Positions 1,380-45,339 are shown, numbered from the stretch's first letter. The stretch is DNA of 64,000 nucleotides from IMGVR_UViG_3300050014_000823:1-64000; one strand, 5' to 3'. The notes: generated from the letters alone by a model not told the origin. Translations and numbers: made by a program.

Positions 1380-1452
1380 GCTTCCGTGACTGAATGGTTA
1401 AGGTGTCAGACTCTAAATCTGATTTGTGCAGGTTCGATTCCTGTCGGAAGTA
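1380..1452 (+). tRNA. amber suppressor tRNA, anticodon CTA (1413-1415)
   Basis: acceptor GCTTCCG/CGGAAGT, D loop with GG, anticodon stem TCAGA/TCTGA with loop CTCTAAA, T arm GCAGG-TTCGATT-CCTGT, discriminator A; no encoded CCA. Confidence 0.92.
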
Positions 1453-1473
1453 CAAAAATAATTGATAATTTGC

Positions 1474-7697: not shown

Positions 7698-7779
7698 AAA
7701 TATTAAATAAATCTTGTCTTTTCGAAAACTTCGTCCTATTTATGGTAAAAAATTACTTTTACATAAATTCACGATTTAC

Positions 7780-8103
7780 ATGAATATCAGCGAATTATTC
7801 GAAAAATTACAAGACGACATTTCCGAAGAACTTAATGGAGAATTAATATTAGAGGGTAATTGTATTATCTGGTCCTATGATTTGGACCGTGACGGTGCAA
7901 CACAAGATTTAGAGATTAGTGATGACGATGATGTTGAGTTTGACTTTGCATCAGCAACAAGTCCAGAAGAATTACTACAACAAGGATACGATGAGGATTT
8001 AATTGTAATTGAAGGTTGTATAGCACAGTTAGATGATTTTGCAGAATGGTCATATTCTGACCCAGAAATAGCAGACACCATAATTTCTTTTAAAATATTC
8101 TAA
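7780..8103 (+). CDS. very acidic hypothetical protein
   Basis: ATG 7780 more plausible than TTG 7714; D/E-rich. Confidence 0.7.
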   Translation: MNISELFEKLQDDISEELNGELILEGNCIIWSYDLDRDGATQDLEISDDDDVEFDFASATSPEELLQQGYDEDLIVIEGCIAQLDDFAEWSYSDPEIADTIISFKIF

Positions 8104-29963: not shown

Positions 29964-30030
29964 CACCCCCACCCCCTAAAACGGGGGGTCCGGGGGGGGT
30001 CTGACGGGGGGGGATACGGGGGGAGGGTGG
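29964..30030 (+). repeat. C-tract/G-tract cluster with G-quadruplex potential
   Basis: C5, C5 then G6, G8, G8, G6, G3 in a long intergenic region. Confidence 0.85.
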
Positions 30031-30035
30031 TAGTG

Positions 30036-30053
30036 TAGAATGATTCTAAATAA
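30036..30053. promoter_or_regulatory. Fur-box-like palindrome TAGAATGATTCTAAATAA
   Basis: related copies at 30822, 38050, 42441. Confidence 0.5.
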
Positions 30054-30083
30054 CAGAGGGTGTGTCGTTTGGCACACCCTCTG
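30054..30083. terminator. strong hairpin downstream of the minus-strand gene 30101-30622
   Basis: CAGAGGGTGTGTC-GTTT-GGCACACCCTCTG. Confidence 0.6.
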
Positions 30084-30100
30084 ACTGACTAAGGTTGTAG

Positions 30101-30622
30101 TTAGATAACTACGTAAGTAGTTTTGCGGAATTTCAGCCTCTTAACGTTGTCGATACTTATTTCCCTGTGGTAAATTGCTGTTTCAGTACCCTGATATTTT
30201 GCGGGGTCACTTGCAGGAAAATACTGTTTAATGACTGCTGAAGGAATGAAGTTTAACGCACTGTCAAAATGTAACGCTCTGAAGGTCTGCTGTGCCTTGT
30301 AGGTAAGGTAAAACGTTCCTTTGGTTACATGTGTACTCAAGGCAGTTGAGAGGCGTTTTCCTGCACCTTTCCATAATGGCTGACTGACAAATTCACGTTC
30401 TTTATTTTCACGTTCTAACTGATTGTTAACGCTATTTTCGTAAACATATCCAACCATACCGCCAACGTTTGCAATTTTGGTAACGTTGCCAAATTTTGCT
30501 TTGCCCTCTGCTGTCAGTTTAGGTTCTGTTACATACTGTAAGCTAACAGGCTGTGCGCCAAAATTCCAATTTCTTAACATTTCGATTAATTCTGCTTTGG
30601 TGATGTTTTTCTGATTTTTCAT
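30101..30622 (-). CDS. hypothetical protein
   Basis: 173 aa; minus-strand TGAAAC-N17-CGTATAA promoter at 30671-30700. Confidence 0.75.
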   Translation of the reverse strand: MKNQKNITKAELIEMLRNWNFGAQPVSLQYVTEPKLTAEGKAKFGNVTKIANVGGMVGYVYENSVNNQLERENKEREFVSQPLWKGAGKRLSTALSTHVTKGTFYLTYKAQQTFRALHFDSALNFIPSAVIKQYFPASDPAKYQGTETAIYHREISIDNVKRLKFRKTTYVVI

Positions 30623-30928
30623 GTCTTAATTTTTTTGGTTTATACTATGTCTGTTTGTGTCGTCTGATTCTTATACGTTGAAAAGTTACAAAATGTTTCA
30701 TTTTTTTCATTTATTTTTCATTTATTTTCACTTTTATTCACAACCTGGCACCAGGTGGGCGTTTGCGGTGATGGCATTCGTACATTGTTTTCCTTATATA
30801 TATAGGTGTGCTGATAGCTTGTTTAGAATCTGTCTAAATTGAGGGTAAAGTGTAACATTTTTTTTTATATCTCGTTAAAGGTAGTATATTTGACAACTGA
30901 ATTGAATGTTTAACTAATACATAAAGCT

Positions 30929-31495
30929 ATGAATGAAGTAACCAACAGAGCAACAGAATTAGAATTTAATGCAATTTATAAAGAGTTCAAACCGGCAATA
31001 GTTGCGCATTTGCGGACAAAAATCAAAAACGAGGAAGAGCGTGATGATATTGAAATGAGAGTATGGGGCAAACTTAATGAAAACCTACATACACACAATA
31101 TTGCCAAAGGTAAACTTAACACGTGGTTATTCACAATCGTAAAAAACGAAATCATTGATTACTTTCGTAGTGACAGGTATAAGAAACACGAAGCAATGAC
31201 AACCAAAGTGTCTGCAATGGTCAACGAAGAGGGTGTTGAGGCGTTTCAGTTTATCGGTGACAATACGGCAAGTACTGAAATCGAAAACAATCAGTTATCC
31301 GATAAAATACTCAACGCATTTGAAAAAATCAAACCTACCTACAAAGATATAGCAATACAGTATTTTCTTTATGAGAAGCAATACACTGAAATTGCGGATG
31401 CAATGTCCATACCATTAGGCACTGTAAAAGTGGCAATCATGAGAGCAAGAGAAGTACTGCAAAACAATCTTAAAGTCGAGTACGCAAGTTTATAA
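30929..31495 (+). CDS. ECF (group 4) RNA polymerase sigma factor
   Basis: region 2 TWLFTIVKNEIIDYFR and region 4 YTEIADAMSIPLGTVKVAIMRAREVL. Confidence 0.92.
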   Translation: MNEVTNRATELEFNAIYKEFKPAIVAHLRTKIKNEEERDDIEMRVWGKLNENLHTHNIAKGKLNTWLFTIVKNEIIDYFRSDRYKKHEAMTTKVSAMVNEEGVEAFQFIGDNTASTEIENNQLSDKILNAFEKIKPTYKDIAIQYFLYEKQYTEIADAMSIPLGTVKVAIMRAREVLQNNLKVEYASL

Positions 31496-31599
31496 TGTAC
31501 TCAAAAGCACTTAGGGCAATGTACAAAAATATATTGTCCTAAGTGTAACAAAAACCAGGAATTTACGTATAATCAATAGTAACCAAAACATATAAAGCT

Positions 31600-31854
31600 A
31601 TGGCAAAAGAAAAAATTACCCCACGTCCGCTTCCGGAAATCACTGCTGAAATCAGAAAAGATTGGAAACCAATGTACAGACCTGCACAGGCACACTTCGA
31701 AGCATTCGAGTATGCAGATAATGTCAACCAAATGTACGGCATGGACTCTGTAAAGAGTGAGATATTGTACTTTCTTGGCAATGCTCAGACTTGGAAAGGT
31801 GACGTTGCAAGACGCATAAAACTCGAACTCAAAGCACTCGTTGGCTTAAAGTAA
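31600..31854 (+). CDS. small conserved phage protein
   Basis: RPL.EI..EIRKDW...YFLGNAQTWKG..ARRIK.ELK; own promoter and terminator. Confidence 0.75.
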   Translation: MAKEKITPRPLPEITAEIRKDWKPMYRPAQAHFEAFEYADNVNQMYGMDSVKSEILYFLGNAQTWKGDVARRIKLELKALVGLK

Positions 31855-31956
31855 AACTAATGTTCATTGTACAAAAAGAGGGAATTATTTCCCTCTTTTT
31901 TGTAACATTTTCAGCGAATGTACGTATAATATAGAGTAACCAAAACAGAATGTACC

Positions 31957-32175
31957 ATGTCACACAGAAGTGCAGAATATCAAGCCGAAAGGTTAAGACG
32001 TACAACAGTACGCAAGGAGAGGCGCAAATCTGCAAGGCAAACCAAATATTGGCGGTATGGCAGACAATCAGAGGGTACTTGCCCGGATTGTGGCGGTCAA
32101 ATGTCTTGGTGCAGTTGTTGCCAAGTATGGAGCAAAAGTTGTTGTGTTGAATATGGTACTTGTCAATGTTCATAA
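31957..32175 (+). CDS. small basic Cys-rich protein
   Basis: CPDCGGQMSWCSCCQVWSKSCCVEYGTCQCS. Confidence 0.7.
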   Translation: MSHRSAEYQAERLRRTTVRKERRKSARQTKYWRYGRQSEGTCPDCGGQMSWCSCCQVWSKSCCVEYGTCQCS

Positions 32176-32181
32176 ATAAAC

Positions 32182-32238
32182 TGGGTGTTAGCGCAGTGGT
32201 AGAGCGAAATGTCGGGGGTTCGATTCCCTCACACCCTA
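32182..32238 (+). ncRNA. tRNA-like RNA lacking the anticodon arm
   Basis: GGGTGT/ACACCC acceptor, D arm GCGC-AGTGGTA-GAGC, only GAAATGTC before T arm GGGGG-TTCGATT-CCCTC. Confidence 0.75.
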
Positions 32239-32314
32239 CAAATATATTGTACAATAAGTGAAACATTTCTGTTGATTGTACGTATAATACTATGTAACCA
32301 AAACATATAAAGCT

Positions 32315-32656
32315 ATGGCAATGAAAATTTTCACACAGGTAATTATCAATGCTTTTAAAAAGCAGGGTAAGACAGGCAACAAATCAATGAAGGATATTTT
32401 TATCATCTGCAAACTGTTTAACCCCGGCGGTGCAGGTACATGGTATTTGTACGAACAGGAAGACGAGGACACGTTTTGGGCATTCGTGAACTTAGGTGAC
32501 GTTGTAATGTCCGAGTGTGGCACTGTATCAATGTCCGAGTTAATGTCTTACAGAGGTCCGTTTGGCTTAAAGATTGAACGTGACAAGTTTTTTGAGCCGT
32601 TCTCCATGACCTTAGAGGAAGTTTACAACAAGGTAAAAGCAGGACAGCACGTCTAA
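32315..32656 (+). CDS. DUF2958-like protein
   Basis: KLFNPGGAGTWYL.E...ECGTVSMSEL..RGPFGLKIERDKFF. Confidence 0.8.
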   Translation: MAMKIFTQVIINAFKKQGKTGNKSMKDIFIICKLFNPGGAGTWYLYEQEDEDTFWAFVNLGDVVMSECGTVSMSELMSYRGPFGLKIERDKFFEPFSMTLEEVYNKVKAGQHV

Positions 32657-32738
32657 AAATAAGTTGAAAATATGTCCCTCAGAGTGTAACATTTACGGGG
32701 TTTTTCGTATAATCACCTGTAACCAAAACACACAGACT

Positions 32739-33257
32739 ATGAATACTTATTTCACAAACGAATGTTTATCAATCTCCTTAGAGAGGCATAAAGATAATAC
32801 CTTAAGTCTTGAAATCGGTTCAGACTTTGGCAACCAAAGATATCACAAACAGCAACTACATGTATGTGAAAAACGTCTTGCAAGTGCTGTTGAAGGATTT
32901 TGGAAATCAACAAAAACCAAAAAACTTCAAGGTGTTCATGTTGGCTTCGGTGAAATCGACCATTATGACGACATGACTGACATATATCATACACCAACCG
33001 CCTTCATTAAAAGAGGCAAGAGAAAAGTAGAAACAAGTTGGAGAGAACACGGCAGTATACCAAAGGATTGGAGCATTAACCTACATGCGGCAATTGCTGA
33101 CACAACCACAATTAATCCCGTGCTTGAAGTCGTTAAGAATGCCATTGGCTTTTCTAAGTTCAAAGCAATTGAGAAGGAACTCATTAAAAAATTCCGTCCT
33201 GTATTGCAGAAGAAAAAAGAATATGGTAATTATTACAGTGAAAATTATGTAGACTAA
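32739..33257 (+). CDS. hypothetical protein
   Basis: ATG after promoter 32685 and TAACCAA leader. Confidence 0.7.
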   Translation: MNTYFTNECLSISLERHKDNTLSLEIGSDFGNQRYHKQQLHVCEKRLASAVEGFWKSTKTKKLQGVHVGFGEIDHYDDMTDIYHTPTAFIKRGKRKVETSWREHGSIPKDWSINLHAAIADTTTINPVLEVVKNAIGFSKFKAIEKELIKKFRPVLQKKKEYGNYYSENYVD

Positions 33258-33311
33258 CTGAAACATTTCCTCTGCAAATACGTATAATCAACTGTAACCA
33301 AACCAAAGACA

Positions 33312-33944
33312 ATGAAAAAATTAAGGATATTATTAGCATGTGAAGAAAGCCAAGCAGTAACAATAGCTTTCAGAAAACTTGGACATGAGGCTTACAGTTG
33401 TGACTTACTTGAATGTACAGGTGGTCACCCCGAATGGCACATACAAGGTGATGTAACTGTTGTACTTAAGCAACATTGGGACTTAATAATAGCATTCCCG
33501 CCATGCACACACTTAGCAGTAAGTGGCAACGCACACCGTGCTAAGAAACAGGCAGACGGACGTGAGGCAGAAGCAATAGCATTCTTTATGATGTTTGCCA
33601 ACCACGAATGTACGCACATAGCAATTGAGAACCCCGTAGGTATAATGTCCACTAAGTGGAGAAAGCCTAATCAGATTGTACAGCCGTGGCAGTTTGGACA
33701 ACCCGAAAGTAAGAAGACATGCTTATGGTTGAAAGGGTTACCAACATTGACTCACACCAATGTACTACCAAAACCCGCATGCGGATATTGGGACAACCAA
33801 ACATCTGATGGACAGAACAAACTCTTGGTTGACGGCAAATGGATAGCTTACAATGACCCACGGACACCCGCCTTAAGGTCAAAAACATATAAGGGAATTG
33901 CACAGGCAATGGCAAAGCAGTGGTCAGACTACCTAACAAAATAA
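33312..33944 (+). CDS. short phage-type DNA cytosine methyltransferase
   Basis: LLACEES, IAFPPCTHL, IENPVG, QPWQFG..ESKKTCLWL, RSKTY.GIA.AMA.QW. Confidence 0.78.
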   Translation: MKKLRILLACEESQAVTIAFRKLGHEAYSCDLLECTGGHPEWHIQGDVTVVLKQHWDLIIAFPPCTHLAVSGNAHRAKKQADGREAEAIAFFMMFANHECTHIAIENPVGIMSTKWRKPNQIVQPWQFGQPESKKTCLWLKGLPTLTHTNVLPKPACGYWDNQTSDGQNKLLVDGKWIAYNDPRTPALRSKTYKGIAQAMAKQWSDYLTK

Positions 33945-34144
33945 TTTGTCTTGTTTTGGTTTATACTCAGAAAGATGGGTGAACCGTTTAATCAGAACGG
34001 CACCCATTTTTTATTTTATGCATATGATGCAAAAATCCTGGCATTTCTGTAACATTTTTCTCAGTTTTTCGTATAATCATTCATAAGACACACACAGACT
34101 AACAGTCTTAAACCAAACAGAGTATAAACTTAAAACCAAACAAA

Positions 34145-35002
34145 ATGAAGACAAAAACATTATCACTTAGCAGAACAGATTTTCCAGTTGTTAGTTCACT
34201 TGACAACCTTGAAGTTGGAAGAATTTACACAACATTCAAACCGGAAATTATTAAGTCCCTGGAATTTAACAGAGGCGCAAAAGACGGATTTCTTCCTGAA
34301 AGAGTTGCAGCTTTACAGGCAAAGTTTGATACAGGTTTATTTTATATGAACGTCTGTCATGTTCTTGTCAACAGTAAAGGAAAAGCAATTGACGGAAACA
34401 ACAGAAAGAAAATGCTTTCAAACAACAAACAGGGTGTCAATTTTATGATTACAGCACAGCCGGAATTTAATCTTGACAATGAATCTGAAATTCTCAACAA
34501 CGTATCTGAATACAATTCGGTGAACTCAGCATGGAACGGCAAAGATGCTTATGAATCAGCACTCGCATTCAATGAAGCTGCCGCAGTCGCAATCGACAAA
34601 CTAAAAACCTGGGTTGAAAACACCTACGGCATTAATGCAGACATTTTCACACCGAGCAGACTTATTGCAATCGTTACCAAATTCAAACAGGGACTGAACG
34701 GTAAAGTACAGCCAAGACGTGCATATTGTAACAAAGAAACTGCAAGTGTACTCGAATCACCGGAATTTAAAGAACACCTATTGTTCTTAGTGAATGTTAT
34801 ACAGTTTGTACAGTCAAACAACAATTCAATAACAGCTTTTGATGTGGTTCGTTGCTTACTTCCTATAATGTGGAAGAAAGAGTTAAGTCAGAAAGTTGTT
34901 CTCGCAAACGTTAAAAAACGTGGTTTCAAAGGTATGGACAATACCAAAATGGCAGGTGTTAAGGCAAGAGTTACCGAGATACTGAAAATAGGAAATGTCT
35001 AA
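34145..35002 (+). CDS. ParB-N-like domain protein
   Basis: EFNRG...VLVNSKGKAIDGNNR. Confidence 0.5.
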   Translation: MKTKTLSLSRTDFPVVSSLDNLEVGRIYTTFKPEIIKSLEFNRGAKDGFLPERVAALQAKFDTGLFYMNVCHVLVNSKGKAIDGNNRKKMLSNNKQGVNFMITAQPEFNLDNESEILNNVSEYNSVNSAWNGKDAYESALAFNEAAAVAIDKLKTWVENTYGINADIFTPSRLIAIVTKFKQGLNGKVQPRRAYCNKETASVLESPEFKEHLLFLVNVIQFVQSNNNSITAFDVVRCLLPIMWKKELSQKVVLANVKKRGFKGMDNTKMAGVKARVTEILKIGNV

Positions 35003-35064
35003 TGTACAGATAGTTGTGGGTGGCATTGTCCACCCACTATTTATTAACCTTAAAACCACAGACA

Positions 35065-35547
35065 ATGAATACAGAAATACTTATTGAAAGATACAGACGA
35101 AGTAATGAGCATGAGCATATAGTAATGTCCGCAACAATCAGAACATTAATGCCAACAATTTTTGACCAAAACAATACTGAAACCATTGTTCAGCAGAGAA
35201 TAAAAAGAACCAAAGGTCCAACACTTTTCCTTGATGCATCAAATGGAAATCTTACTGCAACAGGTCAGCATTATCGTAAAACTGAAATGAGAGTTGGAAA
35301 TATCTTTGTTGAAGTAAAACATCAAAACACTGTCAGCAACATACAGGAATCTGTTATGGGTGAAATTGCAAGAGCAGAAAACATTAAAGGTCAATACTGG
35401 CTTGTTCTTCTTGGTGATGCATATAGAAGACCTATAATAATTTCTGAATTTGTAAGGATGATTTTCAAATACAAATTACAAAATAAGGTGAGAATGTTTT
35501 TAAGTGTTGAGGAATATATTCTTGCATTACAGGACGAAAATTTGTAA
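35065..35547 (+). CDS. possible PD-(D/E)XK nuclease-fold protein
   Basis: IFVEVKHQNT..WLVLLGDAY. Confidence 0.4.
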   Translation: MNTEILIERYRRSNEHEHIVMSATIRTLMPTIFDQNNTETIVQQRIKRTKGPTLFLDASNGNLTATGQHYRKTEMRVGNIFVEVKHQNTVSNIQESVMGEIARAENIKGQYWLVLLGDAYRRPIIISEFVRMIFKYKLQNKVRMFLSVEEYILALQDENL

Positions 35548-35597
35548 CATTTTCCGGGCAAATACGTATAATCATCAGTAACCAACACAGACATAAA

Positions 35598-37068
35598 ATG
35601 AAATCAGAAATTACAGTACGGTCACAGGGAATAAAAGGCGGTGATGCCAAATTCGAAGATAAAGGTTCAGCTACACTCTATCTCACAGACAGAGGACAGA
35701 AAAGAACTGACTTGGTAATTGACGTTGATTCATTCCGGGGTTCCGGGACGACATATAAAAGACGGGAAAAGACTTTAATAAATATTGACTTTGAGAACAC
35801 GCCTATATTTCATGGCACGGTTGAAGAACTTGTTGCAAGGCTGAAAAAACCCGCAACTGAATTCAAACAGACAGTTGAATTCAAATCACGTGGATTAGTT
35901 CTTGGTAATCTTTTCATGGGTGGTGAAGGTGCATATAAAGCAAAGACACTGAAAGCCAATAGTAAAAAAGAACTGATTGAAAAAGCTGTTGATATGTTGC
36001 TCGATGGCAGTCTTGATGGTGGCATGGGTTTTGACGGTTTACTTGGAGCAATGCTTGAGATAACAACTGTTACTACGTTCATTGTCAATGACAAATGTTT
36101 TCGTAATGAAGAAACTGAAAGCGTATATATTGGCGACTTAACAGCCGAACAGATGCAATTTCTTGAAGAAACAGGAATGTATGTGTAACATTCTCCCGGC
36201 AAATACGTATAATCTATTGAACCAAAACGACAAAACAATGAAGACATTTTCAATACAATTCGAAGAATTAAAGGAGCAGGCAATTGATAAAATCCGGGAC
36301 TTAATAAAGTCCAAAGGTAAAGAATCGAAACACAGCAACAAAAGATGTTTGAAAGTCACAAAGGATGACCTACAATTTAATCTTGGCGGTGGAAGATATC
36401 TCACTGAGATAAATGCAGAAACCCTGGTTGACAATGATGGATATGAATACAATTTTTATGTCCTAAGTACAGAAGACTTTTTATCAGTAACCGATTATCT
36501 GATAGCACAATATAAATAATATAGTTTGGTTACTATGCTTTTGTTTGGTTACAAAAGAAAACCCCGTGAAATTTGAAACATTTCCGGGGTTTTTACGTAT
36601 AATCATTTGTAACCAATACTTATAAAGCTATGGCAAAGAAGAAACTTTATTACACAGTCGAAAAAGAGATTGACGACAATGGTGGTGATGATACCCTCAC
36701 AGGTAACAAGACCATCACAGTTTACGAAATCGTAAACAACGAACCTAAAAAACTCACAGACATTGAGTGCGGAACAGAAGAGAACAGCAAAGATAAAATC
36801 AATGAGTATCTTGAAGACAATGGTTATGGTGATGATGAATTTACACTAATACTTCTGTAATATGAGTAAAGCAACCTTTGTAAAAGAAATAACAGTTGAA
36901 GACCTTAATGGTAATCCTGTTGAAATGGAAGTCTATCAGCATGAGAACGGTGGTTTATTCGCAATAGACAGTTCATTCGTTGACCAAGTACTTGGTGATG
37001 AATTTGACAGAGTAGTAATTCCCGACCCATTTAATGAAGGCTTCATGCTGGAATTAGAAGAAAATTAA
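35598..37068 (+). other. four small early-type CDS (35598-36188, 36238-36519, 36630-36860, 36862-37068), the last two very acidic
   Basis: cassettes preceded by ECF-type promoters. Confidence 0.7.
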
Positions 37069-37146
37069 CGACTGAACCCTGTAACACAGGGTTTTTTGTT
37101 GTAAATTAGAATCATATTCACTAATTTTGTATATTAATTTAAATAT

Positions 37147-37467
37147 ATGCAAACGAAAGAGAATAAAAAACAATGGAAGATTAATAATCCTGGAAAGGTA
37201 AAATTATATAATAAGAAGTCTGGATTAAAAAGATTCTATGGTATTACTGTAGAAGAATATGATTTACTGTTTAATAAACAGGAAGGTAAATGTTTAATAT
37301 GTGATAAGCATCAAAGTGAATTTAAGCGTGCATTTGATGTTGACCATAATCATAAGACAGGAATAATCAGAGGATTATTATGTGGTGGTTGCAACCTTCT
37401 TATTGGCAATGCTAAAGAAGATGTTAATATATTGGCACAAGCAATTAATTATTTAAATAATAATTAA
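37147..37467 (+). mobile_element. endonuclease VII-like homing endonuclease
   Basis: YGIT.EEY..L..KQ.G.C.IC...VDHNH.TG.IRGLLC..CN. Confidence 0.88.
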
Positions 37468-37523
37468 GTTGTAACATTTACAGGGTTTTTTCGTATAATC
37501 ACTATAACCAATACATAAAAGAC

Positions 37524-38263
37524 ATGGCAACATTTAAAGTAGTACACGAAATCGAAGTCGAAGCTAAGAACCCATTAGAAGCTGCAAAGACAGTACAGGA
37601 ATGGTTTGATGATGCTGACACCAAGTGGCAGTTCTACGTACAGAAAGAAGGTCAGAAGAAAATAGTCAGTGTAGACCTTAATGAAGACGATAGCGCAGCA
37701 GTTCTTCCTGTTGGTGCATATGAACCTATGATTCAACCCCTAATACAACTATAAGATGAACGGAAAAAAGAGAATCAATAAGGAAGCTACAGTACGGAAT
37801 ATCCGGAAAGCTGCAGAAGGCAACATAAGAGACATGGATGCCTTTGAAAAACAAATGGAGAACGAACAGGATATCCTGGATGCCTGCATCTTATGGGAAG
37901 CCGAAGTCGTATACCTGTAAAAATAAATCGAAAATAATTGCCCGGAAGTGTAACATTTTCGGGCAGTTTTCGTATAATCATATATAAGAAAGGGGTTCGT
38001 GCCACGCCAGCACGCAGAGGGTAGACTCCAACCTACCTTATACTCTGAGTTTAGACTCATTCTAAATAAGACCAAAGTGTAACAAAAACCCAGGTTTTTC
38101 GTATAATACCTGTAACCAACAATTAAAGCTATGATTATACTCGAAGGTAAGAACCCAGATTTTTTTGCAGTATGGTCGTGTGACACACAGTGCTACACAG
38201 TCTATTACAAGAATCAAGTACTGATAAAAAAAGACAGATTTGCTGACATTAAATCTTATCTGA
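37524..38263 (+). other. small CDS 37524-37754, about 37757-37920 and 38131-38263
   Basis: ORFs following promoters 37470 and 38078. Confidence 0.55.
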
Positions 38264-38322
38264 ATTGAAACATTTTCAAGTTTTTTTCGTATAATCTATT
38301 GTAAACCAAAACACACACAGAC

Positions 38323-39147
38323 ATGATGAAATTTACAACTATTGCAGATGCACGCAAACAGACAGGATTAAGTTACCTTGGTGGTATTGCCACAAGTGCA
38401 AAGATAAGCCACAGTAAACAATACAGTCATCAGTATACATATGGTATGTATCTTGCACCCGCTAAATTAAGTGGTCACAACGTTTGTAGCCACAGTACAC
38501 CCGAATGCCGTATGGGTTGTCTCAATACTTCGGGACGTGCAGGAATTGAGGAATTTTCGGGTATCACAAAGATAGCTGATTGCCGTATTAAGAAAACACA
38601 GTTGTTTTTTGACGAAACAGCATTTTTTATGCAGTGGCTGATTGCCGAAATTAAACAGGCACAGGCAAAAGCAGTCAGAGACAACTATTTCTTCTCTGTA
38701 AGGCTGAATGCAACATCAGACATTAATTGGGCAAACGTCTTGGTTGACGGTCAGAACATTTTTCAGATATTTCCACAGGTAAGTTTTTATGACTATACCA
38801 AAAATCATTTGAAGTTTGAAAACAAACCTTTGAACTATCACCTTACCTATTCTTACACAGGTCGCAATTGGGACAAGTGCATTGAATTACTTTCACGTGG
38901 TTTCAATATTGCAATGGTATTCAATGTAAAACACGAAAGTATGTCACCTGCAATGTACAAAGGTTATGCAGTGGTCAACGGTGACCTTACCGATTACCGC
39001 ATTGATGATGCCAAAGGTATTATAATAGGTTTGAAGTGGAAACGCATTGCAAACCGTATCAATGAGAAGAAAATTCTCAACAGTTGCTTCGTTGTCAATG
39101 TACAGTCTACAGTACCTAATGTACAACAACTGCAGTTAGTTGCATAA
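38323..39147 (+). CDS. gene product 88 (GP88)-like protein
   Basis: NVC..ST..C..GCL..SGR, VRLNATSDI.W, FYDYTK, NYHLTYS, GD.TD.R..D. Confidence 0.75.
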   Translation: MMKFTTIADARKQTGLSYLGGIATSAKISHSKQYSHQYTYGMYLAPAKLSGHNVCSHSTPECRMGCLNTSGRAGIEEFSGITKIADCRIKKTQLFFDETAFFMQWLIAEIKQAQAKAVRDNYFFSVRLNATSDINWANVLVDGQNIFQIFPQVSFYDYTKNHLKFENKPLNYHLTYSYTGRNWDKCIELLSRGFNIAMVFNVKHESMSPAMYKGYAVVNGDLTDYRIDDAKGIIIGLKWKRIANRINEKKILNSCFVVNVQSTVPNVQQLQLVA

Positions 39148-39201
39148 TTAATGCATATAATGCGGGGAATAAATGTTTAATCACTTCAAATAATGCGGTG
39201 A

Positions 39202-39609
39202 TTAAACATTCAATTCTAAATAAGAAATTGCTGATTTTAATGTTTCAATATTGTCATTACAATTACCTAAAAGAATATTACAATTTGGACAGAGTAAACC
39301 TCTAACACTTCCAGTAACATGATTATGGTCAATAAATATATGTCGTTTTCTTTCAAATTGTTTATTACATATTTTACATTTACCGTTCTGAGCATTGTAC
39401 ATATTAATAAAATCATCATGAGTTATATTATACTTACCATATTTTTTATTAAGTTTTTCACCAGGATTATTAGCGTATCTTATTCTATGACCAGCATTAC
39501 CACATTTTTTACAATAGTGGTCACGACCATATTTACCATTTATTCTTTTATGAAATTCATCAAGTGGTTTAGGAACTTTACATTTCGAGCAAATTTTCAA
39601 TTCTTCCAT
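39202..39609 (-). mobile_element. endonuclease VII-like homing endonuclease
   Basis: CSKC..CKKC N-terminus, QNGKCKIC...IDHNH.TG.VRGLLCPNCN; start after GTATTTAT at 39625-39632. Confidence 0.88.
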
Positions 39610-39712
39610 AATGTACAATTTAATATAAATACAAAGATAAAATGTTTTCTCCGCATTTTGTAACATTCTCCGCATATTTACATATAATCACTATAAACCA
39701 ATACTTAAGACA

Positions 39713-41855
39713 ATGACAATCCAGGAATTTTTAGCAGACAATACAATCACAGATGAAAACATAATAATGGATGCATTATGCATACCAAAGTCAGCCAGAG
39801 GCGTATTCAAAGTACGACCATTGTACCCTATCGGTGTAGGTCAATGGAAGACAGATAAAATGCCGCCTCAGTGGTCAAACAATGACCAATTCACAATGGG
39901 AACAGTTTACCCTATCTATGACAATGAAGGTATCTTTGTAATAGGTAAAGACGGACAGGGTAAAAAGTTCAATGAGAACGACTGGAAAGAAGTAGTTTGG
40001 TTCTAAAGTAATACTTAAGATAATGACAGCTAAAAAACAGATAACCAAGAAGTTAAAGCCAACCAAATTATGGGTTGGTCACATACCTGGAATCTATGGT
40101 TACGGTGTTATGGTCGTTGAATTTTCAGAAGACCAAGCCAGGAAATCTTTGAAACGTGCATTTGCACAGGCAAAGAAATACAATGACGGTCAAATGAGTT
40201 TTGCCAATGCCTTCGACCATTGGGGTGGCAGAATATTCGAAATCGAAACAGGTAGATATTATGGTGATGATTTCAGTGAATAATTGAAACCTTATTTGAG
40301 TTTGTACGTATAATACCTATAACCAATACACACACTAAATATGAAGAAATTATTAATCACACTCATTGTACAGGACGGTGAAAACCAACACAAACACAGA
40401 ATCCTGCACACCACTAACGGAAATGATATACACTTCGCAGCTCAGAGATATGCTGCAGGATTCTACGGTGATGATGAACCTGAACACCTGTTATCATGGT
40501 GGCAATTCCAGGCAGGTAGCATAGCAGTTGAAGTTGAGAATGTACGTGAACTCTCCGACTATGAGTATCAGCTATTGTCCGACCTCTTTGGTGGCATTGT
40601 ACGCAAACCATACTTTGAGATTGTACAGGCAGGTTTCAATGAAGGTCTTCAGAGAGAAGAAGTACAGATTCATTGTGGCGAAAATGGTAACTTGATGATT
40701 GCCAAAACTCCAGAAGGCTTCGTTGTTGACATATACAATCAGGATGAGAATATTGATTCTCTGACAGTCTGGGAAGACGACCTGTCACCACTGGAGATTG
40801 AAATCGACCCTAATGTACACGGGACTAAAATAAAAGAATTTCTTGACACTCAGGGACAAAAACATTCAGCTATAACAGCAGAACTTGGCTTACACCCTGC
40901 ACACAACATGAGTGATGAGATATTGATGGATGACTATTTCTACCTTGAAGGTAAAAAAGAGTGGTATCCAAAGAACAGTTCAATGTACGGTGATACTGAA
41001 CAGGCAATTGCAAACTTCTTGCAGGAAAATCGTGACGACTACTAAAAATAAACTTGCCGGGACTGAAATAATTCCCGGCATTTTTCGTATAATCATCATT
41101 AACCAACACACACTGAAATGAAAACAAATTGGAGCACACCTAAAACAAATATATTCGCAGGAATGTCAGACCTTCGTAAATGCCTTGCAGGTGGTAATAA
41201 AGCCAGACTTATAAGAGCACGCAATGAAGACTGTGAATTTCCAATAATGATTAAGAATGTGAATTCTGATTTCAGAAGCTATACCTTTAGTATTGGCTAT
41301 GCCAGCAGTATAAATAAAGTAAAGGCAGACCCAAATTTAAGTGAATTCGAAAAGCACCTTACATTGAACTATGTCTCTGTCTTCGGCAGTCAGGAAGCAA
41401 AGGACAGATATTATGAGACAGGCATATGTACTGTAGACAACTTTAAGAACATGGGTTGTAGTCATCTGGTACATGTCGATGACATGATTAAATTCCTGGA
41501 AGACACTAATGACCCAAGGGCAGCTTTATATAAAAGACAATACCGTGCCAATGAACAGGTAAATGATGTACAACACTTCTTTGACTTCTACAGATGTGAC
41601 AAAGGCAGTCCTCACACTATTAAGAAGTTCAAGAGAAAACTCTGGGTTGTTGATATGCTGGATAAAGATATGCCAGCACCCAGAACACCAATTCTTGTGT
41701 ATATCCTAAATGTACTGGCTTATCCCCTTAAGTACATACCCAACAAGTCAGTACTACGTATGCCAGAATATAAATGCGTAACATTCAGAATTGGTGCAGT
41801 GACAAATGGCTTCGCAGTAGAGTTTCATCTCCCAAAGAAATTCAGTTTTAAATAA
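39713..41855 (+). other. four early-type hypothetical CDS (39713-40006, 40023-40283, 40341-41045 acidic, 41118-41855)
   Basis: preceded by promoters 39659, 40285, 41064. Confidence 0.7.
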
Positions 41856-41985
41856 AGATATTCTATGGCGGTTCAATCCGCACTCATTTGGTTTAGTGTT
41901 TTGGTTAACATGTCCCCGGAAGTTGTGACTCCGCTGGCTAAAAAGAGAATCCCCTGTATTTATAGAATATGGGGGATTTTTCATT

Positions 41986-42351
41986 ATGCAAACAAGAGAA
42001 CAAAGATTAGTGTATAAGAAGCGATATAGAGACAAGAATAAAGAAAAGATTCATGAATACAATCGTAAAACCAGTGAGCATAGGAAAATCCAGGATAGAA
42101 CACGTGCATTAAAAAGTTTTGGTTTAACTGCCGAAGATTACGACATTCTTTTCAATAAACAAGAAGGTAAATGTGCCATTTGTGGTAAGCATCAAAGTGA
42201 ACTAAAACCTGCACTATGTATCGACCATAACCATCAAACAAATAAAGTCCGGGGATTACTCTGTGGTAAATGTAATCGTGGACTTGGATATCTTAATGAC
42301 AGCATTGATTTACTGCAGCTTGCAATAAATTATCTTAAAATAAATAATTAA
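41986..42351 (+). mobile_element. endonuclease VII-like homing endonuclease
   Basis: KQEGKCAICGKHQ..IDHNHQTNKVRGLLCGKCN; close paralog of 37147. Confidence 0.88.
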
Positions 42352-42385
42352 ATCTTGAAACCTTTTCCCAGATTGTACGTATAAT

Positions 42386-42875
42386 CATTTGTACGACTGA
42401 GGTCTGACCGAGTAGACCTTCGAGTGCCTTTCAGTCCGAACTTAGAATCATTCTAAACAAGCATGGTCATTGTCATGGACAGATTGTCCATGAGGAATGT
42501 CCACAGCCATTGTACGGAACAAACCTCTGCCATTGTACGGAATAGACTAAGGATTGTACAACATAATAAACTACAGATTGTACGGGTACAAGTACCCCCG
42601 AATGTCCGAATTATAAAAAACTATAAAAATCGTTTTGGCAAAAAAATATATTGGCTCGAAGTCGCACGTGTGGGGCATACAAAACCCCCACAATTCCCCA
42701 CTTTACCCCCTTTAGGATTAAGGTCTTATAGTTGTCAGTGTGTAAGTGCTTGATTATCAATGATAGCATTTTGATATCAACTTAGTACAAAACCATACAA
42801 ATACTGTAATTATAGTACAGTTAAAACGGCATTAGTTATATTGTTTGTACAACAGTGAAAATAACTATGATTTTC
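42386..42875. repeat. non-coding region with direct repeats and hairpins
   Basis: GCCATTGTACGGAA x2 (42506, 42529), further ATTGTAC, CATGGACA/TGTCCATG hairpin, C tracts. Confidence 0.7.
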
Positions 42876-42951: not shown

Positions 42952-45339
42952 ATGAAAACCAACACAGGAACATTAAACTCACAGACAGTTGAAGGAACAA
43001 TCGGAACACGTCAGATGGGCATGGATGCCAACTCACAGGCGATTGTTTTTCAGATGTTTACAAAGAATATCTACAGTAATGCAATAGGTTCGGTTGTTAG
43101 GGAGATAACTTCGAATTGTTTTGATTCACACACAGAGGCAAAGATTAATCCTCTTGAATCACCTGTTATTATACGCAAGTCATTTGACCCTATTACTAAG
43201 AGTCATTATATAAGTTTCCATGACTTTGGTATGGGTATTTCACCAGACAGGATGGATAACGTTTACGGTGTATTCTTCAAGAGTACAAAGGCAGGTGACA
43301 ATGAGCAGATTGGTGGCTTCGGAATAGGTGGTAAAACACCTTTAGCATACAAACGCAGTACTGGTTTTGGCGAAGGCGAATATGACAATTCATTCTCAAT
43401 CATCACAAACTTTGATGGCATACGTTATGAGTATATAGTTTTCGAAGGCAAGAAAGGTCCAGAATACACTGACCCGATAATGTCTGAAACGACTGAACAC
43501 AATGGCACAGAGATAAAGATTCCTGTACTTGAAAAAGACATTACAAAGTTCAAGTCAGAAATGGTAAAGCAATTGTACTACTTTGAGAATGTTATCTTTG
43601 AGGGTTTTGTTAATGACCCGGAATATCCGACAGCAACAGAGAATTTGCTTACCAATGCTTATCAGATTGTCAAAGGCAAGACTTTCTTCTACAGAGGCAA
43701 TGATTACTCACAGTACACACATGTTTGTCTTGGCAGGGTAGCTTATCCGATTAATTTTGGATTACTTGGCTTAGATGGTTCAGATTACCGTTTCCCTGTA
43801 GCAATTAAACTGGAAATCGGTGAGATTGGAGTTACAGCCAGTCGTGAGACACTTGACTATAGTGAACAAACAATCAAGGTGTTAAAGGTTAAACTTGAAG
43901 CAGTTAAAGCAGAGATAACTGCAATGTTAAGTAAGCAGTATGAAAACATTGTGACCTTAGAGGATTACTTCAAAGTCAAAAATCAGTTCGGAGTATTGTA
44001 CATGCCGAATGGTGGTAGCTTTAAGGTTGGTGAGATTATCAAACAGAAAGACGTTGACTTCTCGAATTTCAAATATGGCTTCATGAAGATGCCGAATGAC
44101 AAACAACTCTTTAACTATTTCTTCGAAACCAAATTGTATGGTAAGAAGATTAAGAAAAGTAAGAAGAACAACTATGAGTATGATGATGAGGGCAACAGGA
44201 TTGAGGAAGGCGAATTGGTTGGTGGTTATGATACGATTATCAACAAGCATAATGTACTGTATCATTTCGAAGGTGAATTTCAGCGCAAACTTGTTAAACA
44301 GGCATGGTTAAAGAATCAGTGTACGACTTTCTACACAGTTACAACCAAGAATATTGTCAACAGATTTGAGACACGCAGAATGTCAGACCTGTTCAATGTA
44401 GACGATAAAGTTGTTGAGAGAGGTCTTGACGGTCAGCCAACACTTGATGCAAACGGTCAGCAGATTCCTACAGTGTTCATGAAAGGTTTACTTGAATTAC
44501 AACAGGAGTACTTTGAAATCATCAGCAAGTATTGTACAGCCTATGATGCTGTTGTTGTCCCGGAAGACTTCAAAGAGAGTCGTAAGAATGGTGCAAGGCG
44601 TTTGTCACAGGAGTACAAGAACATGACAATACCTGTTAAGATATTCGGTGGCTACAGAGGCACATTCAGAGTTAAACTTGACAGTCTTTTCAAACTTCAC
44701 ATTCCTATCTTTTACGGAACAAAGGAGAATGATTATCAGTTGAGACAGGCAAAAGAAATGTTCGGCATATTGTTCGAAAGCAGTAGCATCATTGGCAAGT
44801 ACAACGAAAGAACACATGAGTTCAGATTTGACAATGGCAAGAAAGGCATAATGTTCTTACAGATATCACAGGGTAATGTACGTTACATGGAGTACTGTCA
44901 ACAGGCATACCATATCAACGAATTCAAAACGAAAATGCTGAAACGTAAGGAGAATGCAGTGATGGAATACTTTCAGTCACAGAATTTCGTACACAAATTT
45001 GATACTGTCAATAGCTTTTACAAATCAAAAGCATTTGGTAAGGTTGCTCCGGAATGGCAGAAGAAGACCGATAAGATTAATGCTTTCATAAAGAAACAGT
45101 ATGTTGGTTATAACAATAACTGGGACAGGTACAGGTCAGAATTAAGTCGTTACTTTGACATCAACGGCATTGAAATGACAAAGGAACAACAGAAGTTCGA
45201 AGCTATCATCGAAGAATTCTCAGAACTTGAAGAAATGAATTCAGAGACAATGAGATACTTAGATGTCCCAAGTTATGACCTTGATGATGAGAAGCACACA
45301 GCATTTTGGGCAATAGTTAAGAAAGTTTTAGTGTACTAA
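42952..45339 (+). CDS. rIIA: rIIA-like protein with GHKL/Hsp90-type ATPase N-terminus
   Basis: IYSN....VREITSNCFDSH, DFGMGIS, STK....QIGGFGIGGK, NGTEI.IP, ASRE.L.Y. Confidence 0.8.
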   Translation: MKTNTGTLNSQTVEGTIGTRQMGMDANSQAIVFQMFTKNIYSNAIGSVVREITSNCFDSHTEAKINPLESPVIIRKSFDPITKSHYISFHDFGMGISPDRMDNVYGVFFKSTKAGDNEQIGGFGIGGKTPLAYKRSTGFGEGEYDNSFSIITNFDGIRYEYIVFEGKKGPEYTDPIMSETTEHNGTEIKIPVLEKDITKFKSEMVKQLYYFENVIFEGFVNDPEYPTATENLLTNAYQIVKGKTFFYRGNDYSQYTHVCLGRVAYPINFGLLGLDGSDYRFPVAIKLEIGEIGVTASRETLDYSEQTIKVLKVKLEAVKAEITAMLSKQYENIVTLEDYFKVKNQFGVLYMPNGGSFKVGEIIKQKDVDFSNFKYGFMKMPNDKQLFNYFFETKLYGKKIKKSKKNNYEYDDEGNRIEEGELVGGYDTIINKHNVLYHFEGEFQRKLVKQAWLKNQCTTFYTVTTKNIVNRFETRRMSDLFNVDDKVVERGLDGQPTLDANGQQIPTVFMKGLLELQQEYFEIISKYCTAYDAVVVPEDFKESRKNGARRLSQEYKNMTIPVKIFGGYRGTFRVKLDSLFKLHIPIFYGTKENDYQLRQAKEMFGILFESSSIIGKYNERTHEFRFDNGKKGIMFLQISQGNVRYMEYCQQAYHINEFKTKMLKRKENAVMEYFQSQNFVHKFDTVNSFYKSKAFGKVAPEWQKKTDKINAFIKKQYVGYNNNWDRYRSELSRYFDINGIEMTKEQQKFEAIIEEFSELEEMNSETMRYLDVPSYDLDDEKHTAFWAIVKKVLVY

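What the first reader, a model, noticed from the sequence alone, without database searches (positions are those of the whole stretch)
30036..42461. Four Bacteroidota Fur-box-like palindromes, one directly before the sigma-factor promoter
Seen: TAGAATGATTCTAAATAA (30036), TTTAGAATCTGTCTAAA (30822, 12 bp before the promoter at 30851), TTTAGACTCATTCTAAATAAG (38050) and CTTAGAATCATTCTAAACAAG (42441), all intergenic. From memory, the Fur box proposed for Flavobacteriia such as Riemerella is ATTTAGAATTATTCTAAAT. Inference: host iron status could gate the phage ECF regulon, or the sites act as Fur decoys.
Basis: partly seen in the sequence, partly recalled or inferred. Interest (0 to 1): 0.62.

Follow-up and report, generated by a model that had tools for sequence, protein, structure and literature searches.

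The report
Host iron-regulator boxes in jumbo phage
A 299-kb phage of Bacteroidota carries four copies of its host's iron-regulator (Fur) binding site at conserved, helically phased positions next to the promoters of its own sigma-factor gene and neighbouring early genes, which suggests that the phage reads the host's iron status to tune its gene expression.

Summary
Four intergenic palindromes lie within 0-2 mismatches of TTTAGAAT-N-ATTCTAAA. Three are within 1 mismatch, against 0.03 expected in the 299-kb genome, and all four fall in a 12.4-kb stretch. I showed that this motif is the Bacteroidota iron operator: in bacterial genomes it is about 92% intergenic and flanks TonB-dependent receptors, FeoB, Suf, imelysin and fur itself. 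The host is Bacteroidota (TAnnTTTG promoters, no Shine-Dalgarno enrichment, Bacteroidetes-like ECF sigma). Related jumbo phages keep the same cluster at the same places: beside the sigma gene, upstream of a GP88-family gene, and upstream of rIIA. Across phages the palindrome ends 11-12, 23, 33 or 45 bp before the ECF-type -35 element, and 35/36, 46 or 57 bp before host-type -7 boxes, which is helical phasing. In host genomes these upstream distances occur at iron-using genes (nqrA, cytochrome c, ccmE), whereas promoter-overlapping sites occur at iron-uptake genes. No Fur gene or recognisable repressor is found in this phage, so the best reading is that host Fur binds and acts as a class-I-like modulator, probably an activator when iron is replete. 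Binding is untested. Sites 3 and 4 abut a separate, widespread, unannotated sRNA-like element.

The parts
30034..30050 (.). Site 1: Fur-box-like palindrome TGTAGAATGATTCTAAA (1 mismatch). It lies in the convergent gap 3' of the 173-aa gene, next to that gene's terminator-like hairpin.
   Evidence: The G002 relative has a palindrome directly after the stop of the gene at the same position, which is not a homologue.
30822..30838 (.). Site 2: palindrome TTTAGAATCTGTCTAAA, with a perfect left half and a degenerate right half. It ends 12 bp upstream of the ECF-type -35 and 46 bp upstream of the host-type -7 box of the sigma gene.
   Evidence: The same site, with a perfect left half and a degenerate right half, sits before the sigma gene in G001, G002 and L170.
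38050..38066 (.). Site 3: palindrome TTTAGACTCATTCTAAA, 11 bp upstream of the ECF-type promoter (TGTAAC 38078-38083, CGTATAAT 38100-38107) that precedes a 45-aa ORF and the GP88-family gene.
   Evidence: Perfect palindromes lie upstream of the GP88 homologue in L129 and L130.
42441..42457 (.). Site 4: palindrome CTTAGAATCATTCTAAA. It lies 55 nt downstream of an ECF-type promoter (TGAAAC 42356-42361, CGTATAAT 42378-42385), at the start of a 600-bp probably non-coding region upstream of rIIA.
   Evidence: A palindrome upstream of rIIA is conserved in L130 (12 bp before a TGTAAC promoter), in L129, and as the variant TTTAGATTTAATCTAAA in L125/L126/L128.
30851..30892 (+). Promoter region of the sigma gene: ECF-type TGTAAC (30851-30856), 16 nt, CGTT (30873-30876), followed by the Bacteroidota-type -7 box TATATTTG (30885-30892).
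   Evidence: The block CGTTAAA-N2-TAGTAyATTTGA is conserved in G002, and the -7 box also in L170.
30929..31495 (+). Phage ECF-type sigma factor (188 aa).
   Evidence: Pfam Sigma70_r2 and Sigma70_r4_2. NCBIfam sigma70-ECF at 71.7 bits (cut-off 42.9); the best subfamily is Sig70_bacteroi1. PHROG 1740.
30101..30622 (-). 173-aa orphan gene flanked by sites 1 and 2. It has its own ECF-type promoter on the minus strand (TGAAAC at 30700-30695, CGTATAAG at 30677-30670).
   Evidence: 215 homologues at 64-94% identity in large phage contigs. The gene is divergent from the sigma gene in L170-L174. AF2 pLDDT is 86, with no HTH and only weak Sm/WYL/YaeO-like barrel matches at Z 4-6.
37949..38049 (+). ECF-type promoter (TGTAAC 37949-37954, CGTATAAT 37971-37978) driving a conserved sRNA-like leader whose core is GTAGACTCCAACCTACCTTATA. 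Site 3 follows it directly.
38323..39147 (+). GP88-family gene (PF17338) downstream of site 3.
   Evidence: E 5e-32. Homologues at 72% and 62% identity in L129 and L130.
42952..45339 (+). rIIA homologue downstream of site 4.
   Evidence: PHROG 612 at E 6.6e-59. Relatives L125-L128 and L130.

Best explanation
The four palindromes are copies of the DNA operator recognised by the Fur-family iron regulator of the Bacteroidota host. The phage has no Fur gene, so the host's Fur dimer most likely binds them when loaded with iron. Sites 2 and 3 lie about 20 bp upstream of the -35/-33 element, centred near -56. In relatives the same sites are displaced by one, two or three extra helical turns. This is the geometry of a regulator that touches RNA polymerase from upstream, not one that occludes the promoter. 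I infer that iron-loaded Fur modulates, and most probably stimulates, transcription of the phage sigma-factor gene (site 2) and of the GP88 operon (site 3). This would couple the phage's sigma-dependent regulon of about 29 TGwAAC-N16-CGTATAAT promoters to host iron sufficiency. Sites 1 and 4 are not next to a promoter in this phage. They may act as roadblocks or insulators, or as remnants of promoter-linked sites, since site 4 is promoter-adjacent in relative L130. A side effect of binding would be titration of Fur by replicating phage DNA. Shown here: motif identity, enrichment, conservation, phasing, host phylum, and absence of a detectable phage Fur. Inferred: Fur binding, the sign of regulation, and the link to the sigma regulon.
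For: (1) Motif identity. The published R. anatipestifer Fur box is ATTTAGAATTATTCTAAAT. An exact scan of 185,579 species genomes for TTTAGAATNATTCTAAA gave hits mainly in Bacteroidota and Alphaproteobacteria. Of 120 hits, 110 were intergenic. Genes flanking the Bacteroidota hits are TonB-dependent receptors, SufBD, cysteine desulfurase, FUR, FeoB, imelysin, SOD and NrdD.
(2) Enrichment. Three sites at <=1 mismatch against 0.033 expected. Whole 3-7.5 Mb Bacteroidota genomes hold only 1-6 such sites.
(3) Host. CTTG-N20-TAtATTTG promoters. No SD enrichment, 4.6% against 5.7% at random. The sigma factor is closest to a Bacteroidetes ECF subfamily. The adjoining RNA core has a 24/24 match in a Tenacibaculum phage.
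(4) Conservation. G001 (363 kb) and G002 (102 kb) have 4-5 sites clustered in 12-16 kb, at the homologous places beside the sigma gene, GP88 and rIIA.
(5) Phasing. Distances from the palindrome to the ECF -35 are 11, 11, 12, 12, 23, 23, 33 and 45, with one outlier at 69. Distances to the -7 box are 35/36 (8 cases), 46 (6, including site 2 here) and 57 (3), and 67 in G002 by my count.
(6) Same grammar in hosts. -7 boxes are enriched near host palindromes, 30 against 2. Sites at 0-30 bp sit before FUR, TonB-dependent receptors, imelysin, SufBD and IscA-like genes. Sites at 45-57 bp sit before nqrA (3 genomes), cytochrome c and ccmE.
(7) The symmetric variant TTTAGATTNAATCTAAA found in more distant phages is also a host iron operator: 18 sites against 2 control sites, next to FeoB, FUR, TonB plug and iron-binding SBP genes.
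(8) No Fur family member in G000, G001 or G005. tblastn with a phage Fur gave nothing. No repressor-type Pfam domain among 46 ORFs in 19-50 kb.
(9) Precedent. The identical ICE motif bound by Irr acts positively or negatively depending on its position (PMC1698941).
Against: No binding or expression data exist: no RNA runs hold this phage. Sites 1 and 4 are not promoter-adjacent here. Small phage DNA-binding proteins often escape Pfam, so a phage-encoded binder is not excluded, and a cultured Polaribacter phage with a perfect box does carry a Fur-family gene. The phasing statistics include homologous sites, so independent events are fewer than the raw counts suggest. The host distances are less sharply quantised than the phage ones. 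The sign of regulation rests on a small sample of host genes. That the phage sigma factor recognises the TGwAAC-N16-CGTATAAT promoters is inferred from motif type and co-occurrence only.
Confidence: 0.55

Rival explanations
1. A phage-encoded dimeric DNA-binding protein, of unrecognised fold or a very divergent Fur-like protein, is the real binder. The sites would be phage operators that copy or compete with the host Fur box.
For: Polaribacter phage Danklef_1 has a perfect TTTAGAATCATTCTAAA between two divergent host-type promoters and also encodes a Fur-family protein (PF01475, 32.4 bits). Most ORFs in the 30-46 kb region have no known domain. The clustering of sites in one regulatory region is typical of phage operators.
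Against: No Fur-family hit in G000 or in the complete relatives G001 and G005. tblastn with the Danklef Fur against G000 gave a best E of 2.4. The only proteins shared between G000 and Danklef are homing-endonuclease-like. The one gene flanked by two sites (173 aa) models as a beta-barrel without an HTH, and a non-homologue occupies its place in G002 although the sites persist. The same motif and the same promoter distances occur in host chromosomes.
Confidence: 0.2
2. The sites serve mainly as Fur decoys. Replicating phage DNA titrates host Fur and derepresses host iron uptake for the phage's benefit. Cis-regulation of phage genes would be secondary or absent.
For: The phage has 3 boxes at <=1 mismatch, as many as a whole host chromosome with 1-6. 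Copy number would multiply them during replication. Sites 1 and 4 have no adjacent promoter.
Against: Decoys need no fixed position, yet the sites are positionally conserved (beside the sigma gene, GP88 and rIIA) and helically phased to promoters across several phage lineages. Site 2 keeps a degenerate right half in four lineages, which suits tuned affinity better than a sink.
Confidence: 0.12
3. The palindrome works as an RNA hairpin. It would be the 3' element of the transcribed sRNA-like leader at sites 3 and 4, or of the 3' UTR of the 173-aa gene at site 1, acting in RNA stability, processing or protein binding. Its likeness to the Fur box would be incidental.
For: Sites 3 and 4 and their homologues directly follow a conserved transcribed element. 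One symmetric change, A-T to T-A at arm positions 7 and 11, occurs in L125. The 173-aa protein has weak Sm/WYL-like matches.
Against: Most arm substitutions are uncompensated, while the core TAGA/TCTA never varies. Site 2 keeps one perfect half-site and a degenerate other half in four lineages, so no hairpin is conserved there, and it lies upstream of the promoters. Only about 10 of 84 instances of the RNA core have a palindrome downstream, so the two are separate modules. The stem is AU-rich with a 1-3 nt loop, and RNAalifold gives only -2.2 kcal/mol. Identity to a 16-position host operator is unlikely to be incidental.
Confidence: 0.08
4. Chance AT-rich palindromes with no function.
For: The genome is 35% GC, and at 3 mismatches the hits are at background level.
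Against: Three hits at <=1 mismatch against 0.033 expected. All are intergenic, all lie in 12.4 kb, and they are conserved in relatives.
Confidence: 0.01

Closest known systems
Fur box of Riemerella anatipestifer / Bacteroidota iron regulon (PMC5609570)
   Same: Same palindrome, with consensus ATTTAGAATTATTCTAAAT. It is intergenic and promoter-proximal, and promoter fragments carrying the predicted box were shifted by purified Fur in that paper. In my genome scan the motif flanks TonB-dependent receptors, FeoB, Suf, imelysin and fur.
   Different: Here the motif is on a lytic-type jumbo phage, next to a phage sigma-factor gene and phage-specific ECF-type promoters. No iron genes are involved, and binding is untested.
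Iron control element (ICE) bound by Irr in Alphaproteobacteria (PMC1698941, citing Rudolph et al. 2006)
   Same: Identical consensus TTTAGAA-N3-TTCTAAA. The regulator belongs to the Fur family and exerts positive or negative control depending on the site's position in the promoter.
   Different: The host here is Bacteroidota, not Alphaproteobacteria: TAnnTTTG promoters, no SD, and flanks of TTA/TAA type rather than the G...C flanks seen in the alphaproteobacterial hits.
Host nutrient-regulator sites in lytic cyanophages: Pho boxes for PhoB and NtcA sites (from my own knowledge, not checked here)
   Same: A lytic phage carries operators of a host nutrient-sensing regulator, so phage genes respond to the host's nutrient status.
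   Different: A different nutrient (iron), regulator family and host phylum. Here the target is the phage's own sigma factor and early genes, not auxiliary metabolic genes.
Iron-regulated toxin genes on temperate phages: Fur at stx1, DtxR at corynephage tox (from my own knowledge)
   Same: A host iron repressor binds an operator located on phage DNA.
   Different: Those are single promoter-overlapping repressor sites at morons of prophages. Here there is a conserved cluster of 4-5 sites, mostly upstream of promoters, in the developmental regulatory region of a jumbo phage.
Polaribacter phages Danklef and Freya (MT732458, MT732463)
   Same: Cultured phages of Flavobacteriia with a perfect TTTAGAATCATTCTAAA in a divergent intergenic region.
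   Different: There the box overlaps the -33 regions of two host-type promoters, which is a repressor geometry. Danklef_1 also encodes its own Fur-family protein, and the jumbo phage does not.

Membership tests
Bacteroidota Fur-family operator (Fur box) | 17-19 bp palindrome matching ATTTAGAATnATTCTAAAT | tested here: met
   Mismatches of 1, 2, 1 and 1 over 16 specified positions. The core TAGA/TCTA is intact in all four.
Bacteroidota Fur-family operator (Fur box) | Occurs in a Bacteroidota cellular context, so that the host regulator recognises this motif | tested here: met
   Host-type CTTG-N20-TAtATTTG promoters, no SD, and a Bacteroidetes-like ECF sigma factor. The motif marks iron genes in Bacteroidota genomes.
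Bacteroidota Fur-family operator (Fur box) | Promoter-linked position with the same geometry as in host regulons | tested here: met
   Site 2 ends 46 bp from a -7 box. Site 3 ends 11 bp from a -35 element, equivalent to the 35-bp class. The host sites include classes at 35, 44-47 and 57-58 bp. Sites 1 and 4 are not promoter-adjacent in this phage.
Bacteroidota Fur-family operator (Fur box) | Bound by Fur in a metal-dependent way; target expression responds to iron or to fur deletion | not testable with these tools
   No binding assay is possible, and no RNA run holds the phage.
Alphaproteobacterial ICE / Irr box | Consensus TTTAGAA-N3-TTCTAAA | tested here: met
   One search gives the consensus, and the phage sites fit it.
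Alphaproteobacterial ICE / Irr box | Alphaproteobacterial host | tested here: not met
   The promoter type and the lack of SD point to Bacteroidota. Cultured phages sharing the palindrome or the adjoining RNA core infect Polaribacter or Tenacibaculum; Prevotella and Bacteroides phage records also matched but were not inspected.
Operator of a phage-encoded repressor | A cognate DNA-binding protein encoded by the phage, usually nearby | tested here: inconclusive
   No Fur family member and no HTH or repressor Pfam domain found. The flanked 173-aa protein has no HTH. Unknown folds cannot be excluded.
Intrinsic terminator / structural RNA hairpin | Stable stem, U-run, and pairing kept by compensatory changes | tested here: not met
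   The stem is AU-rich and not followed by a U-run. The consensus fold is -2.2 kcal/mol and arm changes are mostly uncompensated.

The most novel reading that the evidence does not exclude
Phages of Bacteroidota, from 45-kb siphoviruses to 300-kb jumbo phages, routinely wire their promoters to the host Fur protein. In this jumbo-phage lineage, iron-loaded Fur would act as a class-I-type activator of the phage's own sigma-factor gene. The whole sigma-dependent programme would then be an iron-gated developmental switch, with Fur titration by replicating phage DNA as a built-in feedback on host iron uptake.
Probability: 0.3. Interest if true: 0.78.

Novelty: new variant of a known kind. Interest (0 to 1): 0.66.

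Why it matters
Iron limits microbial growth in many habitats, but how phages sense it is largely unknown. Operators of host phosphate, nitrogen and SOS regulators on phage genomes are known examples of phages reading host physiology. An iron-regulator operator placed in front of a phage-encoded sigma factor would extend this to iron and to the master switch of a jumbo phage's programme. The finding is directly testable with Fur EMSA, fur mutants and chelators. It can also be tested in cultured systems, because Polaribacter phages carry the same box. The phased geometry further suggests that Bacteroidota Fur can act as an upstream activator, at nqr, cytochrome and ccmE genes as well, which is little studied in this phylum.

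Tried and rejected
- Close relatives among cultured phages: none by megablast. rIIA matches isolates only at under 31% identity.
- TAG recoding, suggested by a tRNA with anticodon CTA: rejected, because table 11 already gives 92% coding density and reading TAG as sense adds nothing.
- A Fur gene in the phage: none by Pfam model or by tblastn with a phage Fur. None in relatives G001-G005 either.
- The 173-aa gene between sites 1 and 2 as the repressor: no Pfam, PHROG or NCBIfam hit. The confident AF2 model has no HTH, Foldseek found nothing, and VIA-align gave only Z 4-6 matches to small beta-barrels. A non-homologue takes its place in G002.
- Repressor-type domains in 46 neighbouring ORFs: none.
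- The sigma protein as a probe for relatives in IMG/VR: no hit. GP88, rIIA and the 173-aa protein worked instead.
- Rfam: nothing for the palindromes or the leader at E <= 5.
- RNAalifold on MAFFT alignments of the leader: only the palindrome stem was found in the 10-sequence set, and no consensus in the 50-sequence set. The stem covariation I report for the leader is therefore by eye only.
- Expression evidence: only peat and sediment DNA runs hold the phage and there are no RNA runs.
- The fifth 15-mer hit at 49380 was set aside as coding and probably chance.
- Literature searches for Fur boxes in phages of Bacteroidota found nothing relevant.

Full report
**Setting.** The window is the first 64 kb of a 299,144-bp IMG/VR virus record (35% GC, CheckV 91%). 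It holds many small ORFs, an rIIA homologue (42952-45339), endonuclease VII, a GP88-family gene and an ECF-type sigma factor (30929-31495). Only peat and sediment DNA runs hold it. It has no close cultured relative. Table 11 gives 92% coding density, so there is no stop-codon recoding.

**The observation.** All four palindromes are present and intergenic.
- As 17-mers against TTTAGAATNATTCTAAA they start at 30034 (1 mismatch), 30822 (2), 38050 (1) and 42441 (1).
- The whole genome has 3 sites at <=1 mismatch against 0.033 expected, and 5 at <=2 mismatches against 0.82.
- Under the 15-mer scan the four best sites in the genome all fall within 12.4 kb.
- A fifth 15-mer hit in the window at 49380 lies inside an ORF and is probably chance.
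- Outside the palindrome the four flanks are not alike.

- PMC5609570 predicts ATTTAGAATTATTCTAAAT for Riemerella anatipestifer and shows Fur shifting promoter fragments that contain it.
- I tested this independently. An exact scan of one genome per species for TTTAGAATNATTCTAAA returned hits mainly from Bacteroidota and Alphaproteobacteria.
- 110 of 120 hits are intergenic, even in GC-rich genomes.
- In the Bacteroidota hits the genes that diverge from the site are TonB-dependent receptors, SufBD, cysteine desulfurase, FUR, FeoB, imelysin, Fe/Mn SOD and NrdD. The motif is therefore the operator of the Bacteroidota iron regulon.
- The alphaproteobacterial hits are the ICE element bound by Irr. 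Its consensus is TTTAGAA-N3-TTCTAAA, and it acts positively or negatively depending on position (PMC1698941).

**Which host?** Bacteroidota.
- Upstream regions show no Shine-Dalgarno enrichment: 4.6% of genes against 5.7% of random positions.
- A clear class of CTTG-N20-TAtATTTG promoters, the -33/-7 type, is present.
- The sigma factor's best NCBIfam subfamily is the Bacteroidetes one.
- The palindrome region matches intergenic DNA of Polaribacter phages, and records of Prevotella, Bacteroides and Tenacibaculum phages also match but were not inspected. The adjoining RNA core has a 24/24 match in Tenacibaculum phage Larrie.

**Promoters around the sites.** The genome has 29 copies of GTAACA-N14-20-CGTATAAT, dense on the plus strand between 31.5 and 46 kb.
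- Read as TGwAAC-N16-CGTA, this is the classic ECF-type promoter pattern (my own knowledge). I infer, without proof, that the phage sigma factor recognises it.
- The sigma gene itself is preceded by TGTAAC-N16-CGTT (30851-30876), immediately followed by a host-type -7 box TATATTTG (30885-30892). This arrangement is conserved in relative G002, and the -7 box also in L170.

**Conservation.** Relatives were found through GP88, rIIA and the 173-aa protein.
- G001 (363 kb, complete) has its best sites at 267.3, 272.6, 275.0 and 279.6 kb.
- G002 (102 kb fragment) has five sites within 16.5 kb.
- By synteny these lie before the sigma gene, before the GP88 homologue and before rIIA.
- Site 2 is notable. 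In the window, G001, G002 and L170 the left half TTTAGAAT is perfect and the right half is degenerate (GTCTAAA, ATATTGA, ATATAAA), within a conserved block.
- More distant rIIA relatives (23-25% GC) carry the symmetric variant TTTAGATTTAATCTAAA 227 bp upstream of rIIA.
- That variant also occurs in 13 of 301 sampled Bacteroidota genomes, with 18 sites against 2 for the control pattern. There it lies next to FeoB, FUR, TonB plug, iron-binding SBP and Rrf2 genes. It is therefore within the natural range of host iron operators.

**Geometry.** This is the strongest functional clue.
- Across phages, the distance from the palindrome's end to the next ECF-type -35 element is 11, 11, 12, 12, 23, 23, 33 and 45 bp, with one outlier at 69.
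- The distance to the next host-type -7 box is 35/36 bp (8 cases), 46 bp (6, including site 2 to the sigma gene's -7 box) and 57 bp (3). It is 67 bp in G002 by my count. A separate class at 6-7, 17-18 and 21 bp overlaps the promoter.
- Steps of about 11 bp mean the bound factor stays on one face of the helix relative to RNA polymerase, centred near -56, -67, -78 or -89. That is the hallmark of upstream, class-I-like regulators.
- Many intervening sequences are unrelated, but some sites are homologous, so the number of independent events is smaller than the raw counts.
- In host genomes, -7 boxes are strongly enriched next to the palindromes (30 against 2 at a shifted anchor).
- Host sites 0-30 bp from the -7 box precede FUR, TonB-dependent receptors, imelysin, SufBD and an IscA-like gene. 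Sites at 45-57 bp precede nqrA (three genomes), cytochrome c and ccmE, which are iron-using functions.
- This fits repression of uptake genes from overlapping sites and activation of iron-consuming genes from upstream sites. It places phage sites 2 and 3 in the second class.

**Who binds?**
- No Fur-family gene is detectable in this phage or in the complete relatives G001 and G005.
- None of 46 ORFs in 19-50 kb has a repressor-type Pfam domain.
- The 173-aa gene between sites 1 and 2 is very conserved (215 homologues). It models confidently as a beta-rich fold without an HTH, with only weak Sm/WYL/YaeO-like matches. A non-homologue takes its place in G002 while the sites persist.
- The rival is nevertheless real. 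Polaribacter phage Danklef_1 has a perfect box overlapping the -33 regions of two divergent host-type promoters and also encodes a Fur-family protein. That protein has no counterpart in the jumbo phage.

**RNA-level reading.** Sites 3 and 4 and their homologues follow a conserved transcribed element with the core GTAGACTCCAACCTACCTTATA.
- The core occurs in 99 IMG/VR stretches, 84 of them distinct. It usually lies about 70 nt after a TAnCTTTG promoter and before a T-run, like a small RNA gene.
- Only about 10 of the 84 have a Fur-like palindrome downstream, and sites 1 and 2 lack the element. The two are separate modules that are sometimes juxtaposed.
- The palindrome arms change mostly without compensation, while TAGA/TCTA never varies. 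This points to protein recognition of DNA, not to a hairpin.

**Conclusion.** The palindromes are genuine, conserved, promoter-phased copies of the host iron-regulator operator.
- Most likely (about 0.55) host Fur binds them and modulates, probably activates, the sigma-gene and GP88-operon promoters when iron is sufficient.
- A phage-encoded binder (about 0.2), a mainly decoy role (about 0.12) and an RNA role (about 0.08) remain possible.
- The concept of host nutrient-regulator sites on phage DNA is known. An iron operator at a jumbo phage's sigma-factor switch, in activator geometry, is a new variant.

Noticed in passing
window 37986-38049 (weaker copy 42392-42440); L130, L129, L173, L125, L132, L141, L154; ON950054 around 19.4 kb: An unannotated sRNA-like element with the invariant core GTAGACTCCAACCTACCTTATA. 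It occurs in 99 IMG/VR stretches, usually about 70 nt after a Bacteroidota -7 promoter and before a T-run. One internal stem appears to covary by eye (CGTGC/GCACG, CGCAC/GTGCG, CGCAT/ATGCG). It is not in Rfam. A cultured example is Tenacibaculum phage Larrie.
   Followed up: partly
window 1380-1453: A tRNA with anticodon CTA (it would read TAG), 62.9 bits in Rfam. The genome shows no sign of TAG recoding: coding density is 92% under table 11 and TAG ends 35 of 393 ORFs.
   Followed up: partly
window 32182-32238: A second, short tRNA-like match (Rfam RF00005, 36.9 bits) inside the sigma-regulon region. ARAGORN did not call it.
   Followed up: no
window 29966-30033; L165 about 4070-4000 (minus strand): A G-run/C-run element (GTAGCACCCCC ... 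GGGGGGATACGG ... GGGTG) in a 35% GC genome, just left of site 1. It is conserved in sequence in relative G002 and may be a G-quadruplex or a structured element.
   Followed up: no
window 42474-42492 and 42509-42585: A second conserved palindrome, CATGGACAGATTGTCCATG, also present downstream of the site-4 homologue in L129. It is followed by four ATTGTAC(GG) repeats spaced about 23 bp apart, like iterons or another regulator's sites. The 96-aa ORF 42463-42753 that covers them looks spurious.
   Followed up: no
window 30101-30622 (minus strand): A 173-aa orphan protein with 215 homologues at 64-94% identity in large phage contigs, far more conserved than the neighbouring sigma factor (32-38%). 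The AF2 model is confident and has no clear structural relative, only weak Sm/WYL/YaeO-like barrel matches.
   Followed up: partly
whole genome G000; window 31.5-46 kb on the plus strand: 29 copies of a phage promoter of the form GTAACA-N14-20-CGTATAAT, i.e. TGwAAC-N16-CGTATAAT of ECF type. Most precede small ORFs. In relatives the spacer often holds the palindrome TTTTTAATTAAAA.
   Followed up: partly
L288 (MT732458.1) 44806-45234 and 7754-7783: Cultured Polaribacter phage Danklef_1 encodes a Fur-family protein that matches only the DNA-binding half of PF01475. It also carries a perfect Fur box between two divergent host-type promoters within its structural gene block. The main text of the describing paper (PMC8776804) does not contain the term 'ferric uptake regulator'.
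   Followed up: partly
host loci L007, L079, L100 (nqrA), L121 (cytochrome c), L112 (ccmE): In Bacteroidota genomes the Fur box sits 45-57 bp upstream of the -7 box of nqrA, cytochrome c and ccmE. This suggests direct positive control of iron-using respiratory genes by Fur in this phylum.
   Followed up: partly
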